DNA of 64,000 nt. Source: Bugula neritina. Taxonomy: Eukaryota > Animalia > Bryozoa. Location: positions 1 through 64,000 of the forward strand of contig CAXIUT010000078.1 in the NCBI GenBank assembly GCA_964035545.1, given 5' to 3'. Below are positions 1 to 58,316 of this stretch, piece after piece. Made by a program: the position numbers and the translations under genes. Position 1 is the first letter of the stretch. Every line of letters begins with the position of its first letter. The notes below the pieces were generated by a model. That model saw only the letters and a list, made by a program, of their open reading frames with translations. It was not told where the DNA came from and searched no databases.

Positions 1-111
1 CCCAACCCCAACCCCAAACCCCAACCCCAACCCCAACCCAACCCCAACCCCAACCCCAACCCCAACCCCAACCCCAACCCCAACCCCAACCCCAACCCCA
101 ACCCCAACCCC
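1..111 (+). repeat. Left telomere (CCCCAA)n
   Basis: About 18 copies of CCCCAA at the window start; C4A2 is the Tetrahymena-type ciliate telomere repeat. Confidence 0.97.
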
Positions 112-334
112 ATATCTTTTAATTATAAATATGCAATGATTAAAGAAGTAATATTGATCTAAAAGATCAGGTTGATAATCAGGTTAAATGTTTATTTAGC
201 AAGCTATTTGCGAAAATATTAGAATTAAGTTCGAGTTTAATTGTGCTACCTGAAAGCTGTTTATAATTCTGGTAATAATGAGATATTAATAGCATTGTTG
301 AGATTAAATTTTAATTCAATCAATAAATATATCT

Positions 335-10050: not shown

Positions 10051-10200
10051 GGGGGGTTGGGGTTGGGGTTGGGGGTTGGGGTTGGGGTTGGGGTTGGGGT
10101 TGGGCGTTGGGGTTGGGGTTGGGGGTTGGGGTTTGGGGGGGTTGGGGTTGGGGTTGGGGTTGGGGTTGGGGTTGGGGTTGGGGTTGGGGTTGGGGTTGGG
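10051..10200 (+). repeat. Internal (GGGGTT)n telomeric tract 1
   Basis: 150 nt of G4T2 with a few variant units, between divergent genes. Confidence 0.97.
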
Positions 10201-14843: not shown

Positions 14844-15350
14844 GGTATATGTAGATTAATTATTCAATAATGTTTTAATCAATTCTTATTTGTAAAATTT
14901 AAAACGATTGAATTTGATATTTTTTGTGGTTTAGAAATAAAGTTAGTGTTCTTTTTTACTTCTCTAATTGTTGTAAAAGATAAGTATTTTTTCAGGTTCC
15001 TATTTTATTGAAATCACACAAGTGGTTTGATTTTTTCAAAAGTTGATTTTTATTATTGTTAATCTAAGAAATACACAGGTGAATTTATCATTTAATTAGT
15101 TATCATGGAAAACATAAAGAAGTTTTATTCGATAAGAAGATTTTTTAAATCTCGAAAACAAGGATTTTTAATATAAAAATTTAAGCTTAAAAGCATATTT
15201 AATCAAAGAATGGATATTTTGCAATATTTTAATCCATTTTCTTGGGGGAAAGAACCCAGATTCTGTCAGAATTTAATTTATTTGAGTATAAAATGAAACT
15301 GTTTTAAGATATTATAATTAATTAGGTCTTTAAACACTATTAAAGTTTAA

Positions 15351-18283
15351 ATGGGTTGTTGTGCAAATTCAAATTAAAACGTAGCTAGTGCTCCTCAGAC
15401 TACCTTTAGTCCTACTGATAGCTCAAAGCCGTTCCTATAAGTAAGTGAACTCTCATAAGCCAATCAAAAATTTAAATAGGAACGTTATGAACAGGCAATT
15501 GGTCCTTACAAACACTATATTGAGAGGAATGTTGGGGACAAAAATCAACAAGATTGATGGAGTGGGCCAGACAGAATAGAGTTTGGGATACTATGAATGG
15601 TATGTATCTAAGTGGTACATTGAACAGATCAAAAACGGATAGTTTGTAGGGACAGTCTATGATGCTCTTTCTCTTTGTTTCAAGGTCTGAAAAGTGACTA
15701 AGTGATAATAGCTAATGGAATTGAATGGTATCGGAAGATGACTGATGAATATCCCTAAAATGTTGGCATATTGATGGGTTACGCAAACATTCTTAATAAC
15801 AAAGGTGACTTTGAAGAAGCTATTAACTACTATGAAAGAGTTGCTGAACTGAATCCTAATGGGTTGGACCTCTCTAAACTTTAGCTTTAATATATGAGTA
15901 CAAAAGGATTTCTAAAAAGAATCAATTGAGATGAGCAATAAGATTCTATAATTAGAGCCTAATAATAGAATAGCTTTGTTTGTATTATCTAGAAATGAAA
16001 AAACTCCTGAGGAAAAGATTTAAAAATTGAAAGTAGTAATGAAGCATCATCCAAAATATGCCAGAGCAGTCAATGAAATCGGTATTATAACTGGAGGAAC
16101 TTTAAAAGATTATAGAGAAGCTATTGGGTGGTATAAAAAAGCAATTGAGATAACTCCTGAATATGCTTCTTGCTACAACAATGTAGGAGTCAATCATGAA
16201 CTCTTGAGATAATAATAGTAAGCTATGGTATGGTATTTTCGAGGAATAGAGAGGAATAAATAATACAAAGCTCCTCATGCTAATCTGATTGATGTTTTCA
16301 AAAACTTTAAAATATGATGATCATCAGATAAAGAAAGAAATGGATAAGTATAATATCAAGATTGATTGGTTTTATTACTATATGGGTCTATCTCACTACA
16401 GTGCTAAAAACTACAGTGAATCAATCAGATATTATAACAAAGCATACGATTGTGCACAGGATATTAGATCAGAAATATATAAAATTCACAACTCAGTTGG
16501 AATTTCTTATGATGATATGATGTAAAATTAAAAAGCTCTTGAATACTATAGAAAAGCAATTGAAAGCAACCCTAAAATATCATAGTTCATATTATAACTC
16601 TGCTATTGTTTACAAAAGGCTTCAAAATATTGAAAAAGCAATTTAGTTGTATAAAAAAGCCATTGAAGTCAATCCAAAGTACAGTTATGCTTACAATAAT
16701 CTTGGTAATATTTATAAAACTGATTATAAATATGATGAAGCTATTAAATGTTATAAATAAGCTGTAAGACATTTAAGCACTTATACTTTAGCTTATGCTA
16801 ACTTAGGAATTTTGCTATCTTAAAGTACAAAATTATCGTGAAGCTTTTAATGCTATGGAAATGGCTAAATAGTGTCTTCCAACTGATAACAATAATCTAA
16901 GTGCAGTAATAAATCGTTTTTAAAACAAAACCTCAGTGAGTTTGAACAGTATGGAGAAACATGGAGGCAATATGGATCTATTCAAAGGATCAAAGATAAA
17001 AATTGAAAAACCTTATAAAAATATTTTAATCTAATTTCAGTAAAGTCTTACAGTTCTTAAGGAAAAGAGCCTGTTAATATCGATAAAGTGATGAAAAAAT
17101 AAATTCTATAAATAATTAAACTGGTTAAAGAAGATCAATTCTCACTTAAAAATATAGATAGTATTTTTTATTTAATAAAATACATTTTCTTTGATAATTA
17201 AGAATATTTTCATATCATTCCTCAACTTTTCGCTCAATATTTCATTCAAAATGTGTTTTAAAAGAAAAGACCAGTTCTAGATATTGAGAAATAACTTTTT
17301 TCGATATGTAAATAGTTATCAGCAAAAGCAGTTAAGACAATCAAAGTTAACCCCAGATGCAAATAATAGAAGTAGAAAGATAGTCTTTTCCATGAAATAC
17401 TTTGACCCTCCAACAAATAATAAAGTTGATTTATTCAAATAAACAAAAATACTTTGAAGATTATGCATAAATCTATAGTTAGATTATAAGAGTGAATTAA
17501 AAGGTTAAGGAGACTTATAAAGAGTATAAAGATTTAGTTTAATATGTAAAAAAAAGCATCATTTGGAACTTTGTTTGGAATAGGCACTAAAATTCCAGCA
17601 GATGAAATGCAGTAGTTCAAAGTTATTTTACGTATTTTTGAAAAGATGTTCAAGAGATAATTGGATGAAGAAAAAGTTAATTAAATCATTAAAAAATCGA
17701 TGCAACTCTTCATAAAAAGAGTGGATCTAAAAATGTTAGCACAAGTGAAGTTGTTCACGATATCATGGAAACTTGGACAGAATAAATTACACAAATAGTT
17801 AAAGCAAGGAAAGTAGATAAAATATAGACTAAGTGTGAAGTTAGTGATCTGCTAGAAGCAAAAATTATGTTTAATTCAGTTGATTGTTTGAAAAGAGCAG
17901 TCGATGCAGTAGATTAAATGTGTCATAGGAAAAAGTACAACATAATTTAGATGGATAATCGTCTGGCGAAGCAACAAACTCAAGATGTTGTGTTAAAAAT
18001 TCAGATCAAATAAACTGTTTGTGAGTTACAGCTTAGCGATGAAGCAGGATTAGACCCAATATCACTTTACTCACAGTATTTATGAAATAGAAAGATCTCC
18101 TTTAGGCTGCATTTTTGAAGCTACATCTTCCTGTCAAAGGGATTCAATTATCCTTTCTTCGAGAACTGCAAAGATATAGTTGAACATCTCAAAAAATAAG
18201 ATTCAAATTAAAATGAAGAGATTTTAAAGGCAGCAGAGTATATTGTAGAAACTTTAAAAGATGCTTAAGTATAGAATGATTGA
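15351..18283 (+). CDS. TPR-repeat protein with N-terminal MGCC acylation motif and C-terminal RelA/SpoT-like nucleotidyltransferase domain
   Basis: Multiple TPRs (e.g. AIGWYKKAIEITPEYASCYNNVG; KKAIEVNPKYSYAYNNLG); C-terminal K..R..EK, D-L-L-x-A-K-I-M-F, DNRL, ELQL, HSIYEIER; continuous coding composition with several homopolymer indels. Confidence 0.75.
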
Positions 18284-18360
18284 TTCTCTGATTACGATTT
18301 TAAGTATTCTTTATCAAAGAGGTTTATAATATATGATTATCATTAGATGGTATATTAGGA

Positions 18361-19114
18361 TCATGAAGGCTCTTAGTTTTTATTTTCTTAAATCTTGCCT
18401 TATTTTGTTTAAATTTCTTACTATTTAAAATTTTAACTTGATTAATGCATAATTTAATTTTATTTACAGTGATTTTTTAAATCTTCAGAAGTTTTCTTCT
18501 TTAATTTATTCTTTATTAGCAGTTTTTTATTGAACTCTCCTTTGAAATCTCTTCTTGTTCAACTATCTTAATGCTATTTTCAATATTTATTCCTTATTAT
18601 ACCATCAATTATTCTTCTTTTATATTTTCTCCTTCTCTTTCAACTTTTAATTAACTCTAATTATCTTTTTTATGAGGTTATTTCTTTTAAAATTTTGATT
18701 ATTTATCTTTCTGATTGATATTTTTAAATTTTTATACTTTTTCTACTCATATTGTTAGCCCATTCTTGGTTTAGTTTATCAATAGATTTGAGTTATTTTA
18801 TTGTTTTTTACATTTGTTAGATTATTATCTAATTTTTGTTTGTTTTTCTTTAACTTTATTTCAATGCTTTTGCCTTCTTCATCGCACAACTTTTATTGTG
18901 CAACTGTGAAAAATATAATCCAGTTGATGCTTCGTTAGCTATCATAATATTCCACTCAAGATAGTTTGTTTTGATTTATTGAATATAAGATAGCATTTTT
19001 TCTTTTGAATATGGTTCTCCTTAAAAAGCTGTAACTATATTTTTGGATCTAATTTTTGTTTTATTATTTAGCCTATGTTAGCTTATCTCTAAAAAACCCA
19101 AATAATTTCTTCAT
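18361..19114 (-). CDS. Hypothetical coiled-coil protein
   Basis: ATG 19114, K/E-rich frame ending in TGA at 18361-18363. Confidence 0.55.
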
Positions 19115-27537: not shown

Positions 27538-27613
27538 GGGGTTGGGGTTGGGGTTGGGGTTGGGGTTGGGGTTGGGGTTGGGGTTGGGGTTGGGGTTGGG
27601 GTTGGGGTTGGGG
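27538..27613 (+). repeat. Internal (GGGGTT)n telomeric tract 2
   Basis: Perfect 76-nt G4(T2G4)12. Confidence 0.97.
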
Positions 27614-55709: not shown

Positions 55710-55797
55710 TACATTCGTTATTGAAATAAAATAAATATCATTATATTTATTCATATAATATAGAATAATTTACGTTTAAGTTAATTTTGATTCTTAT

Positions 55798-55879
55798 GGG
55801 GTTGGGGTTGGGGTTGGGGTTGGGGTTGGGGTTGGGGTTGGGGTTGGGGGTTGGGGTTGGGGTTGGGGTTGGGGTTGGG
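55798..55879 (+). repeat. Internal (GGGGTT)n telomeric tract 3
   Basis: 82 nt of G4T2 between two paralogous kinase genes. Confidence 0.97.
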
Positions 55880-58223: not shown

Positions 58224-58316
58224 GGGGTTGGGGTTGGGGTTGGGGTTGGGGTTGGGGTTGGGGTTGGGGTTGGGGTTGGGGTTGGGGTTGGGGTTGGGGT
58301 TGGGGTTGGGGTTGGG
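58224..58316 (+). repeat. Internal (GGGGTT)n telomeric tract 4
   Basis: Perfect 93-nt G4T2. Confidence 0.97.

What the first reader, a model, noticed from the sequence alone, without database searches (positions are those of the whole stretch)
15351..18283. Lipid-anchored TPR protein fused to a RelA/SpoT-like nucleotidyltransferase: candidate alarmone or second-messenger system in a ciliate
Seen, after correcting homopolymer indels: N-terminal MGCC, a long TPR array, then motifs in RelA/SpoT synthetase order. These are FKVILRIFEK (17616), SDLLEAKIMF (D at 17846), IEMDNRL..QDVVLKI, CELQL (E at 18023) and HSIYEIER (18072). Established: RSH synthetase domains (Pfam RelA_SpoT, CDD NT_Rel-Spo_like) carry K/R-x-K, the metal-binding D, ExQ and a distal H..Y; they make (p)ppGpp or (p)ppApp, or pyrophosphorylate tRNA. 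Characterised eukaryotic RSH synthetases are mainly plastid-associated. MGCC is a myristoylation/palmitoylation signal. Inference: a membrane-tethered TPR sensor coupled to a nucleotide-synthesising effector in a plastid-less bacterivore, resembling bacterial sensor-effector defence or stress modules. Caveats: as assembled the Arg of DxxxR reads Glu (CTAGAAGCA, possibly an indel artefact), the GY motif is absent, and the fusion depends on frame correction.
Basis: partly seen in the sequence, partly recalled or inferred. Interest (0 to 1): 0.85.

Follow-up and report, generated by a model that had tools for sequence, protein, structure and literature searches.

The report
Lipid-anchored TPR protein with degenerate RelA/SpoT-like domain
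A ciliate gene that looks broken only because of assembly errors encodes a conserved, probably membrane-anchored TPR protein whose C-terminal domain is a very divergent, previously unannotated relative of bacterial and phage RelA/SpoT alarmone synthetases that has lost the loop which normally binds the guanine-nucleotide acceptor.

Summary
The many frame breaks between 15351 and 18283 are single-base, homopolymer-type assembly errors. Contigs from four public runs (three studies) correct them, giving one ORF of about 977 codons. They also turn the odd Glu into Arg (SDLLRAKIMF).

In-frame TAA/TAG encode Glu here, not Gln, which indicates the peritrich code.

Full-length orthologues on metagenome contigs share the architecture: MGC(C) start, TPR array, helical linker, C-terminal module. 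The module core is the best-conserved part (71-82 % identity).

Pfam does not recognise the module. Several lines still tie it to RSH synthetases:
- A language-model search finds RelA_SpoT as the main named Pfam family among neighbouring clusters.
- The family profile matches Sinorhizobium phage phiN3 'RelA/SpoT family protein' (hhalign 95 %, E 4e-8), which itself matches RelA_SpoT.

The catalytic Asp and the ExQ Glu are conserved. The GY acceptor loop is deleted, and no RSH hydrolase was found in the genome.

Verdict: a new, G-loop-less eukaryotic variant of the RSH synthetase fold. Its product is unknown, and a canonical (p)ppGpp synthetase is unlikely. The scan had noted only this same stretch before.

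The parts
15351..18283 (+). Whole gene: one ORF of about 977 codons once the roughly 17 single-base assembly indels are corrected. TGA stop at 18281-18283. No intron is needed.
   Evidence: Frame hops. Indels against independent contigs. Corrected single frame over 16287-18283. Collinear tblastn of the 977-aa orthologue over 15351-18256.
15351..15362 (+). N-terminal Met-Gly-Cys-Cys, a candidate N-myristoylation (Gly2) and S-palmitoylation (Cys3/Cys4) signal.
   Evidence: Read directly. Orthologues start MGCC (L008), MGC (L011) and MGCC (L013), with unrelated sequence upstream. Acylation itself is an inference.
15470..16872 (+). TPR array (classical 34-residue repeats), interrupted in the window by assembly indels.
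   Evidence: Pfam over cut-off on stop-free pieces: TPR_1/TPR_8/TPR_2 at 15759-15881, TPR_11 at 16024-16209, TPR_17/TPR_11/TPR_1 at 16647-16757. Weaker match at 16289-16522. Boundaries are approximate.
16873..17615 (+). Conserved, mainly helical linker between the TPRs and the module (starts at CLPTDNNN).
   Evidence: Landmark coordinates and 43-59 % identity to orthologues. No Pfam family found.
17616..18280 (+). C-terminal module of about 220 aa: three long helices, a strand-helix-strand-strand-strand core, then four helices.
   Evidence: 57 and then 168 relatives, none with a Pfam domain. AlphaFold model of the orthologous module P0048, pLDDT 80.8.
17828..18116 (+). Module core (TKCEVSDLL to SPLGCIF), the RSH-synthetase-like catalytic core and the most conserved part of the protein.
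17846..17863 (+). Asp-Leu-Leu-Arg-Ala-Lys: the putative Mg-binding Asp (17846-17848), Arg (17855-17857, mis-assembled as GAA; the reads give AGA) and Lys (17861-17863).
   Evidence: The family shows Asp 100 %, Arg 98 %, Lys 100 %. 17855 G>A and 17856 A>G in all four runs. The Asp aligns with the Asp of gp279 ITDLVRG and of RSH LDLLAIR.
17984..17998 (+). Asp-Val-Val-Leu-Lys strand. Between Val (17990-17992) and Leu (17993-17995) the family lacks 8 residues that form the GY..H 'G-loop' in the phage RSH-like protein and in RSH enzymes.
   Evidence: The hhalign alignment shows an 8-column gap opposite VYGYYGTYH of gp279. gp279 GYYGTYH aligns with GYqTiH of long RSHs.
18020..18031 (+). Cys-Glu-Leu-Gln: the ExQ motif, with the putative catalytic Glu at 18023-18025.
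   Evidence: The family shows Cys 100 %, Glu 95 % (Gln 5 %), Gln 97 %. It aligns with CEIQ of gp279 and EvQ of long RSHs.
18072..18095 (+). His-Ser-Ile-Tyr-Glu-Ile-Glu-Arg helix after the last core strand.
   Evidence: His 96 %, Tyr 97 %, Glu 99 %, Arg 97 % in the family. It aligns with HKVYTATR of gp279. In frame only after the deletion at 18033.

Best explanation
This is an intact, conserved ciliate gene (probably from a peritrich) that the assembly mis-renders with about 17 single-base indels.

It encodes a protein of about 977 aa with four parts:
- An N-terminal Met-Gly-Cys-Cys that most likely becomes myristoylated and palmitoylated, tethering the protein to the cytosolic face of a membrane (inferred).
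- A TPR array of about 450 residues, which most likely binds a protein or peptide partner (inferred from what TPRs do).
- A conserved helical linker.
- A C-terminal domain of about 220 residues that is a highly divergent member of the RelA/SpoT-homologue synthetase (nucleotidyltransferase-fold) superfamily (shown by remote homology).

The domain keeps the metal-binding Asp followed by conserved Arg and Lys, and the Glu-x-Gln of the last core strand. Both are near-invariant in about 60-90 relatives. It has lost the 8-residue GY..H loop that positions the guanine-nucleotide acceptor in (p)ppGpp synthetases.

The most likely mechanism is a Mg-dependent transfer from ATP, either of pyrophosphate as in RSH enzymes or of a nucleotidyl group, onto an acceptor other than GDP/GTP bound in the canonical way. 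The reaction would take place at a membrane and be gated by whatever the TPRs bind. The chemistry and the acceptor are inferred, not shown.
For: Gene intact:
- Independent contigs from 3 studies correct every frame break. All listed indels are homopolymer-length changes.
- The orthologue is collinear from 15351 to 18256.
- Other genes in the window keep frames of 600-800 codons.

Architecture conserved:
- L008, L011 and L013 each carry a single ORF of 972-979 aa with the same order of parts, despite GC of 46-58 % against 30 % here.
- All start with MGC(C).
- TPRs pass Pfam thresholds.
- The module core is the most conserved region, at 71-82 % identity.

RSH relationship:
- (b) Language-model neighbours: 66 of 100 named clusters carry PF04607, score 0.95.
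- (c) Sequence: phrog_37685 hits 4 of 7 members. tblastn of P0118 hits phiN3 'RelA/SpoT family protein' at E 2e-4. hhalign of profile A2 against that protein gives 95 %, E 3.6e-8, with a reversed control at 0.2 %. That protein matches Pfam RelA_SpoT at E 1e-4 over 3-106 of 113 positions, and matches 31 genuine RSH synthetase domains at E 8e-4, with a reversed control at 0.5.
- The Asp and the ExQ Glu align through this whole chain. Family conservation is Asp 100 %, Lys 100 %, Arg 98 %, Glu 95 %, Gln 97 %.
Against: - Pfam RelA_SpoT does not detect the module. There was no hit on the genome scan at E<=10, none on the corrected sequence, only 1 of 23 members at E 0.07, and none on the paralogue.
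- Direct hhalign of the family against long-RSH domains is not significant (0.4 %), so the sequence link is only transitive. Its second leg is sub-threshold (23 bits against a 27-bit cut-off).
- The model has 4 core strands and no strand or confident motif for the RxKxxxSxxxK ATP-binding element.
- The Glu is Gln in about 5 % of members.
- The G-loop is deleted and no RSH hydrolase domain was found in the genome. Both count against classical alarmone metabolism.
- No RNA run holds the locus, so expression is untested.
- Acylation, the TPR ligand and catalysis are all untested.
Confidence: 0.7

Rival explanations
1. The module is a catalytically inert RSH-like pseudoenzyme. It would be a nucleotide-binding or purely structural domain serving as a regulated scaffold at the membrane.
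For: The acceptor G-loop is deleted. No recognisable RxK..S..K ATP-binding element is present. Glu is replaced by Gln in about 5 % of members. No hydrolase partner was found in the genome. RsfS/iojap-type inactive nucleotidyltransferase folds are among the structural matches.
Against: The polar residues expected at an active site (Asp 100 %, Lys 100 %, Arg 98 %, Glu 95 %, Gln 97 %, plus Asn-Arg, Lys, Thr and Asp on the neighbouring strands) are the most conserved positions, and they sit in the most conserved part of the protein. That pattern is typical of an enzyme.
Confidence: 0.17
2. It is a working small alarmone synthetase in the classical sense, making (p)ppGpp or (p)ppApp.
For: The closest structures and the phage relative belong to the (p)ppGpp/(p)ppApp/tRNA-pyrophosphokinase superfamily. 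The catalytic Asp and ExQ are kept.
Against: The GY..H loop that stacks on the acceptor base is missing in the whole family. Pfam's model fails. No HD_4 hydrolase domain was found in the 216-Mb genome. The RSH census reports no ciliate RSH (PMC3153485), and no paper in the library links ppGpp with ciliates.
Confidence: 0.08
3. The module is not related to RSH enzymes at all. The resemblance would be a common beta-alpha-beta-beta-beta arrangement (glyoxalase/VOC-like, LuxS-like or other) plus chance motifs.
Against: Three independent kinds of evidence point to the same superfamily: two structural aligners over four libraries, language-model features, and the profile-sequence alignment to a phage RelA/SpoT-like protein at 95 % with a clean reversed control. 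The catalytic residues line up in each. LuxS never appears in any fold search.
Confidence: 0.04
4. The frame breaks are real, and in the assembled strain this locus is a decaying pseudogene.
For: There are about 17 frame-breaking indels in 2.9 kb, while several neighbouring genes keep long frames.
Against: All 12 listed indels are homopolymer-length changes. The indel-to-substitution ratio is about 1:1 against the closest contig. Four runs from three studies agree with each other and give an open frame. That is the signature of long-read consensus error, not of decay. The contig also has other assembly oddities, namely internal telomere tracts.
Confidence: 0.01

Closest known systems
Small alarmone synthetases and toxSAS of the RSH superfamily (RelQ/SAS1, RelP/SAS2, CapRel, Tas1; Pfam PF04607)
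   Same: Single-domain synthetase-type core with the order strand(Asp)-helix-strand-strand-strand(Glu-x-Gln)-helix. The best structural matches have rmsd 1.6-2.2 A over about 67 residues. The Asp and ExQ are conserved and aligned.
   Different: Not detected by the Pfam model. The G-loop (GY..H) is deleted. No clear RxKxxxSxxxK element. Only four predicted core strands. Extra N- and C-terminal helices. Eukaryotic and fused to a TPR array with a lipidation signal. No antitoxin or immunity partner applies, and the product is unknown.
Sinorhizobium phage phiN3/phiM7/phiM12/phiM19 'RelA/SpoT family protein' (phiN3 gp279; phrog_37685)
   Same: The closest sequence relative found: hhalign 95 %, E 3.6e-8, 29 % identity over 89 columns. 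Shared motifs are ITDLVRG, CEIQ and H..Y...RS. It is also top-ranked by Foldseek in the viral library.
   Different: The phage protein is a stand-alone 250-aa protein that keeps the GYYGTYH loop and a KPLKSLLDK motif. It has no TPRs and no lipidation signal. Its own function is unknown, and it sits just below Pfam's threshold.
Eukaryotic RSH proteins already described (plant and algal plastid RSH1-4, metazoan Mesh1 hydrolase, 'divRel' SAS of Dictyostelium, ascomycetes and diatoms)
   Same: A eukaryotic nuclear gene carrying an RSH-type synthetase-like domain.
   Different: Those proteins are recognised by RSH HMMs and keep the canonical motifs (PMC3153485). None is reported from ciliates, none is TPR-fused or N-acylated, and this one lacks the G-loop and any HD, TGS or ACT domain.
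TPR-effector fusion proteins (TPR array plus enzymatic domain), including the TPR-glycosyltransferase noted 4 kb downstream and the C66 paralogue
   Same: The general logic of a repeat 'sensor/adaptor' joined to an enzyme-like domain. The C66 paralogue carries the same module next to TPR_12-type repeats.
   Different: Here the fusion is a conserved orthologue with a fixed architecture across distant ciliates, not a variable family. The domain order is the opposite of the paralogue's.

Membership tests
RSH synthetase domain (Pfam PF04607 RelA_SpoT) | Scores at or above the Pfam gathering threshold (27 bits) | tested here: not met
   The genome scan at E<=10 hit only a bacterial contig, not this locus. 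The corrected module gave no hit. Among 23 family members, 1 scored E 0.07. The paralogue gave no hit.
RSH synthetase domain (Pfam PF04607 RelA_SpoT) | Detectable sequence homology to recognised RSH proteins | tested here: inconclusive
   The direct profile-profile test against 31 long-RSH domains is negative (0.4 %). The transitive route is positive: family to phiN3 gp279 at 95 %, E 3.6e-8; gp279 to PF04607 at E 1e-4 and 23 bits; gp279 to long-RSH domains at E 8e-4 against a control of 0.5.
RSH synthetase domain (Pfam PF04607 RelA_SpoT) | Alpha/beta nucleotidyltransferase-type core superposable on solved RSH synthetases | tested here: inconclusive
RSH synthetase domain (Pfam PF04607 RelA_SpoT) | Metal-binding Asp on a core strand followed by a basic residue (DxxxxR/K) | tested here: met
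   SDLLRGK has Asp 100 %, Arg(+3) 98 % and Lys(+5) 100 %. The Asp aligns with the Asp of gp279 ITDLVRG and of RSH LDLLAIR. The VIA ranges are consistent with this.
RSH synthetase domain (Pfam PF04607 RelA_SpoT) | Catalytic Glu in the ExQ motif of the last core strand | tested here: met
   CE(L/F)QL has Glu 95 % and Gln 97 %. It aligns with CEIQ of gp279 and EvQ of long RSHs. The Glu is Gln in about 5 % of members.
RSH synthetase domain (Pfam PF04607 RelA_SpoT) | G-loop (GY..H) that positions the acceptor nucleotide | tested here: not met
   There is an 8-residue gap opposite VYGYYGTYH of gp279. The family has K-x-Q-T-x-D-V-V-L-K with no Gly-Tyr.
RSH synthetase domain (Pfam PF04607 RelA_SpoT) | N-terminal RxKxxxSxxxK element binding the ATP phosphates | tested here: inconclusive
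It is present in gp279 (KPLKSLLDK aligns with RvKhyYSIYlK). In the ciliate family only a low-confidence alignment to W-T-K-E-I-T exists, and that Lys is only 53 % conserved.
RSH synthetase domain (Pfam PF04607 RelA_SpoT) | Pyrophosphate transfer from ATP to a nucleotide or tRNA 3' hydroxyl | not testable with these tools
   Needs biochemistry.
Long RSH (Rel/RelA/SpoT) | HD hydrolase, TGS and ACT/RIS domains flanking the synthetase | tested here: not met
   None appears in the ORF. HD_4 was not found anywhere in the genome.
Tetratricopeptide repeat proteins | Repeats scoring above the Pfam TPR thresholds | tested here: met
   TPR_1 31.8 bits, TPR_8 31.0, TPR_11 32.0 and 36.2, TPR_17 38.9 on stop-free pieces. 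The orthologue's 551-aa piece carries many TPR families.
Dually acylated (N-myristoyl, S-palmitoyl) membrane-anchored proteins | Met-Gly start with a small residue at position 6 and Cys at positions 3-4 | tested here: met
   The starts are MGCCANS here, MGCCAIA (L008), MGC.NSQ (L011) and MGCC.TR (L013), with unrelated sequence upstream. The fit to the N-myristoylation pattern rests on established knowledge. The modification itself cannot be tested here.
Toxin-antitoxin / anti-phage toxSAS modules | Adjacent neutralising partner gene, patchy and variable distribution | tested here: not met
   This is a eukaryotic single ORF that is conserved and collinear in distant ciliates. PADLOC models gave no consistent hit.
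LuxS (PF02664) | Pfam threshold and LuxS fold | tested here: not met
   Only sub-threshold hits, best E 0.01 and 16 bits against a 27-bit cut-off. LuxS is absent from all fold-search lists.

The most novel reading that the evidence does not exclude
Ciliates carry an active, membrane-tethered, TPR-gated enzyme of the RelA/SpoT fold. Having lost the guanine-binding G-loop, it would pyrophosphorylate or nucleotidylate a new acceptor (another small molecule, an RNA end or a protein). That would be a previously unknown eukaryotic second-messenger or modification pathway, derived from a phage or bacterial RSH-like gene.
Probability: 0.3. Interest if true: 0.85.

Novelty: new variant of a known kind. 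Interest (0 to 1): 0.62.

Why it matters
RSH enzymes are central to bacterial and plastid stress signalling. Recent work showed that the same fold can make (p)ppApp or pyrophosphorylate tRNA.

Outside plastids, eukaryotic synthetase-type RSH proteins are known only as a few sporadic cases, and none from ciliates. Here there is a whole family of more than 150 fragments in public data, none of them annotated. It is strongly conserved, wired to a TPR array and a lipid anchor, and keeps the metal-site residues but lacks the acceptor loop.

If it is active, it defines a new reaction or substrate for this fold and a new signalling module in heterotrophic protists. If it is inactive, it is an example of a eukaryotic RSH pseudoenzyme.

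On the practical side, the case shows that this assembly carries dense homopolymer indels and uses the TAA/TAG=Glu code. Both affect every other gene call made on this genome.

Tried and rejected
- **Pseudogene reading:** I favoured this at first because neighbouring genes keep long frames. I rejected it after laying independent contigs on the locus.
- **Tiny introns or programmed frameshifting:** not needed, since single-base corrections restore one frame.
- **Close paralogues by DNA or short peptides:** only the locus itself was found. The family profile later found one divergent paralogue.
- **Exhaustive protein search with the 78-aa TPR piece:** the long hits share no C-terminal module. 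The short orthologous fragments lie on contigs too short to reach the module.
- **Pfam on short stop-free module pieces, on the corrected module, on 23 family members and on the paralogue:** no usable RelA_SpoT signal.
- **PDB sequence searches with the single sequence and with the profile:** nothing.
- **First AlphaFold model from 23 sequences:** too poor, pLDDT 54. It was replaced by a 102-sequence model.
- **Direct hhalign of the family against 31 long-RSH synthetase domains and against the SAS-like bacterial proteins:** not significant.
- **PADLOC and NCBIfam:** only scattered weak hits. PRK09169 recurs weakly and was not followed up.
- **Search for annotated near-full-length relatives with the 551-aa TPR piece:** only generic TPR proteins. 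Proteins longer than 964 aa could not be candidates, so annotated orthologues of about 975 aa may have been missed.
- **Literature:** no report of RSH or ppGpp in ciliates. The peritrich genomics paper says nothing on code or telomeres.
- **LuxS-like reading:** rejected.
- **5' third of the gene:** its exact corrections (5 indels not printed) were not reconstructed.
Full report
**1. What is in the sequence**

The window is AT-rich (about 30 % GC) with in-frame TAA/TAG, so it comes from a ciliate. From the ATG at 15351 (Met-Gly-Cys-Cys) to the TGA at 18281-18283, the coding signal hops between the three forward frames more than ten times. Stop-free pieces given by reference score above Pfam thresholds for TPR_1, TPR_2, TPR_8, TPR_11 and TPR_17.

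**2. Are the frame breaks real?**

Other genes in the window keep TGA-free frames of 600-800 codons, so I first leaned towards a pseudogene. The reads settled the question.

- Seven public runs from three studies hold the stretch.
- I laid contigs of four of them on 15200-18400. They differ from the window by single-base indels exactly at the frame breaks. Twelve are listed and five were not printed. One contig spans the whole stretch with 16 gaps.
- All twelve listed indels lengthen or shorten a run of the same base.
- Applying the 12 indels and 11 substitutions of one contig turns 16287-18283 into one open frame.
- All four runs read AG instead of GA at 17855-17856.
- A 977-aa orthologue aligns collinearly from 15351 to 18256.

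The gene is intact and the window carries long-read-type consensus errors. The contig also has internal G4T2 telomere tracts at 10.05-10.2, 27.5, 55.8 and 58.2 kb, and a C4A2 tract at its start. It therefore looks like several small somatic chromosomes strung together.

**3. Genetic code**

The 32 in-frame TAA/TAG codons of the corrected part align with Glu in the orthologues. For TAA the counts are E 30, A 7, D 6, Q 6. For TAG they are E 16, Q 3. That is the same profile as the gene's true GAA/GAG codons and unlike its CAA/CAG codons. I know this assignment as the peritrich nuclear code (NCBI table 30).

**4. The family**

The corrected module finds 57 relatives (E down to 2e-57), and a profile of them finds 168. 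All are unnamed or mis-named fragments from metagenome and run assemblies, and none has a Pfam domain. JGI named some of them LuxS, YgiN and similar.

Three metagenome contigs carry full-length orthologues when translated with a ciliate code. They are 972-979 aa, have 7-28 in-frame TAA/TAG and 46-58 % GC, and all begin MGC(C). All have the same order of parts: TPR array, helical linker, module.

Identity to the window protein by region:

| Region | Identity to L008 / L011 / L013 (%) |
|---|---|
| TPRs | 62 / 53 / 55 |
| Linker | 59 / 43 / 45 |
| Module core (17828-18116) | 82 / 71 / 71 |
| Tail | 53 / 40 / 38 |

The core is thus the most constrained part.

In this genome the profile finds the locus itself and one divergent paralogue on contig C66. 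The paralogue has the same motifs and is followed by TPR_12-type repeats.

**5. Is the module RelA/SpoT-like?**

Negative results:
- Pfam PF04607 does not see it on the genome, on the corrected sequence, on 23 members (one at E 0.07) or on the paralogue.
- PDB sequence searches are empty.
- A direct profile-profile comparison with 31 genuine RSH synthetase domains, which I collected from bacterial genomes, is not significant.

Positive results:
- **(a) Fold.** A 102-sequence AlphaFold model (pLDDT 80.8, core above 90) has the element order strand(SDLxRGK)-helix-strand-strand-strand(CExQL)-helix(H..YE..R).
  - Foldseek against PDB ranks RelQ, RelP, an exported SAS, Rel, SpoT and CapRel first, at E of only about 1e-2 (the same held with the poorer first model).
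  - In the second look the seven best chains are all RSH enzymes.
  - The viral library's best named hits are phage RelA/SpoT proteins. The Atlas list includes a PF04607 cluster, with all TM scores at or below 0.41.
  - Generic beta-alpha-beta-beta-beta folds are only about one Z unit behind, so the fold evidence alone is suggestive, not decisive.
- **(b) Language-model features.** 66 of the 100 nearest named Atlas clusters carry RelA_SpoT at score 0.95. Apart from one lower-scoring DUF7211 cluster, no other Pfam family appears.
- **(c) Sequence, by a transitive route.**
  - PHROG family 37685 matches the core in 4 of 7 diverse members.
  - tblastn of two members hits Sinorhizobium phage phiN3, phiM7, phiM12 and phiM19 proteins annotated 'RelA/SpoT family protein', with best E 2e-4. 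Foldseek had ranked the same phage proteins first and fifth.
  - hhalign of the family profile against phiN3 gp279 gives 95 % probability and E 3.6e-8 over 89 columns. The reversed-sequence control gives 0.2 %.
  - gp279's best Pfam hit is RelA_SpoT at E 1e-4, covering 3-106 of 113 positions, at 23 bits against a cut-off of 27.
  - gp279 aligns collinearly with the genuine RSH domains at E 8e-4, with a control at 0.5. In that alignment KPLKSLLDK lines up with RvKhyYSIYlK, ITDLVRG with VLDLLAiR, GYYGTYH with GYqTiH, and CEIQVAT with EvQIRT.

Through this chain, the family's invariant Asp and its Glu-x-Gln align with the RSH metal-site Asp and ExQ Glu. The identity of those residues as catalytic rests on established knowledge of RelSeq, RelQ and RelP. 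The VIA residue ranges agree with this placement (for example model 82-152 against Rel 260-331).

**6. What differs from RSH enzymes**

- The alignment to gp279 shows an 8-residue deletion exactly where the phage protein and RSH enzymes have the GY..H G-loop. In (p)ppGpp synthetases and tRNA pyrophosphokinases this loop positions the acceptor (established knowledge).
- The ATP-phosphate-binding RxKxxxSxxxK element has no confident counterpart.
- The model has four core strands rather than five.
- The Glu is Gln in about 5 % of members.
- No HD_4 hydrolase domain was found in the 216-Mb genome (subject to the assembly's indels).
- The genome's only Pfam-level RelA_SpoT gene lies on a bacterial-looking contig next to a nucleoid-associated-protein gene. 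Its closest relative is in a Sulfurovum MAG.

**7. Interpretation**

- **Shown:** an intact, conserved gene with the fixed architecture MGC(C), TPR array, linker, module. The module is a remote relative of the RSH synthetase fold. It has conserved metal-site residues and a deleted G-loop.
- **Inferred:** dual acylation and membrane anchoring, partner binding by the TPRs, and Mg-dependent transfer from ATP to a non-canonical acceptor.
- **Unlikely:** a classical (p)ppGpp or (p)ppApp synthetase.
- **Live alternative:** an inactive pseudoenzyme.
- **Poor fit:** the defence-module analogy, because this is a conserved orthologue and not a variable family.

**8. Novelty**

- The RSH census (PMC3153485) lists eukaryotic synthetase-only proteins only in Dictyostelium, some ascomycetes and diatoms, and does not mention ciliates.
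- No paper in the library links ppGpp or RSH enzymes with ciliates.
- No database entry for the family carries a domain or a correct name.

I class it as a new variant of a known kind: a G-loop-less, TPR-fused, lipid-anchored eukaryotic branch of the RSH synthetase superfamily, whose nearest relatives are in phages.

**9. Limits**

- Expression is untested, since no RNA run holds the locus.
- The five indels in 15211-16317 were not printed, so the 5' third was checked only through collinearity with the orthologue.
- Annotated orthologues longer than 964 aa could not be searched for.
- The taxonomic range beyond the metagenome fragments is unknown.
- The second leg of the sequence chain is below Pfam's threshold.

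Noticed in passing
window 1-112, 10053-10200, 27538-27613, 55797-55879, 58224-58316: The contig carries a C4A2 tract at its start and four internal G4T2 telomere tracts, all in the same orientation. It looks like several small telomere-capped somatic chromosomes (or parts of them) joined in one contig. The gene studied lies in the 10.2-27.6 kb segment.
   Followed up: partly
window 16287-18283 (and probably genome-wide): In-frame TAA and TAG both align with Glu in the orthologues (TAA: E 30 against Q 6; TAG: E 16 against Q 3). This is the peritrich-type code, not the common ciliate Gln code. Translations of this genome made with code 6 will carry Q where E is meant.
   Followed up: yes
window 15200-18400: There are about 17 single-base homopolymer indels and a GA/AG swap (17855-17856) in 3.2 kb relative to independent contigs from three studies. 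The assembly is locally, and perhaps generally, unpolished, so apparent frameshifts and pseudogenes elsewhere in this genome should be distrusted.
   Followed up: partly
G000:C311:16844-20227 (L001): The genome's only Pfam-level RelA_SpoT gene (327 aa, 48 bits) sits on a contig with overlapping standard-code ORFs at 36-45 % GC, next to a 37-kDa nucleoid-associated-protein gene. Its nearest relative is in a Sulfurovum MAG. This is probably bacterial contamination, prey or a symbiont, not a ciliate gene.
   Followed up: partly
G000:C66:75540-78806 (L049), match at 77040-77306: A divergent paralogue of the module (60.8 bits to the family profile) with the same Asp, CELQL and H..YE..R motifs and a more RSH-like SRVKEKMFKK stretch. 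It is followed downstream, in another frame (possibly another assembly indel), by TPR_12-type repeats, which is the opposite domain order.
   Followed up: partly
I did not examine it.
   Followed up: no
proteins P0077, P0106, P0118, P0120, P0137 (relatives of the module): Fragments of this ciliate family in JGI metagenomes carry unrelated automatic names (LuxS, quinol monooxygenase YgiN, threonine dehydrogenase-like, transcriptional regulator). The LuxS name traces to a recurrent sub-threshold Pfam match.
   Followed up: partly
proteins P0046, P0048: A weak recurring match (E 2e-4 and 2e-3) to the C-terminal end (positions 2127-2262 of 2319) of NCBIfam PRK09169, a very large bacterial hypothetical protein. 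It could mark another distant home of this module.
   Followed up: no
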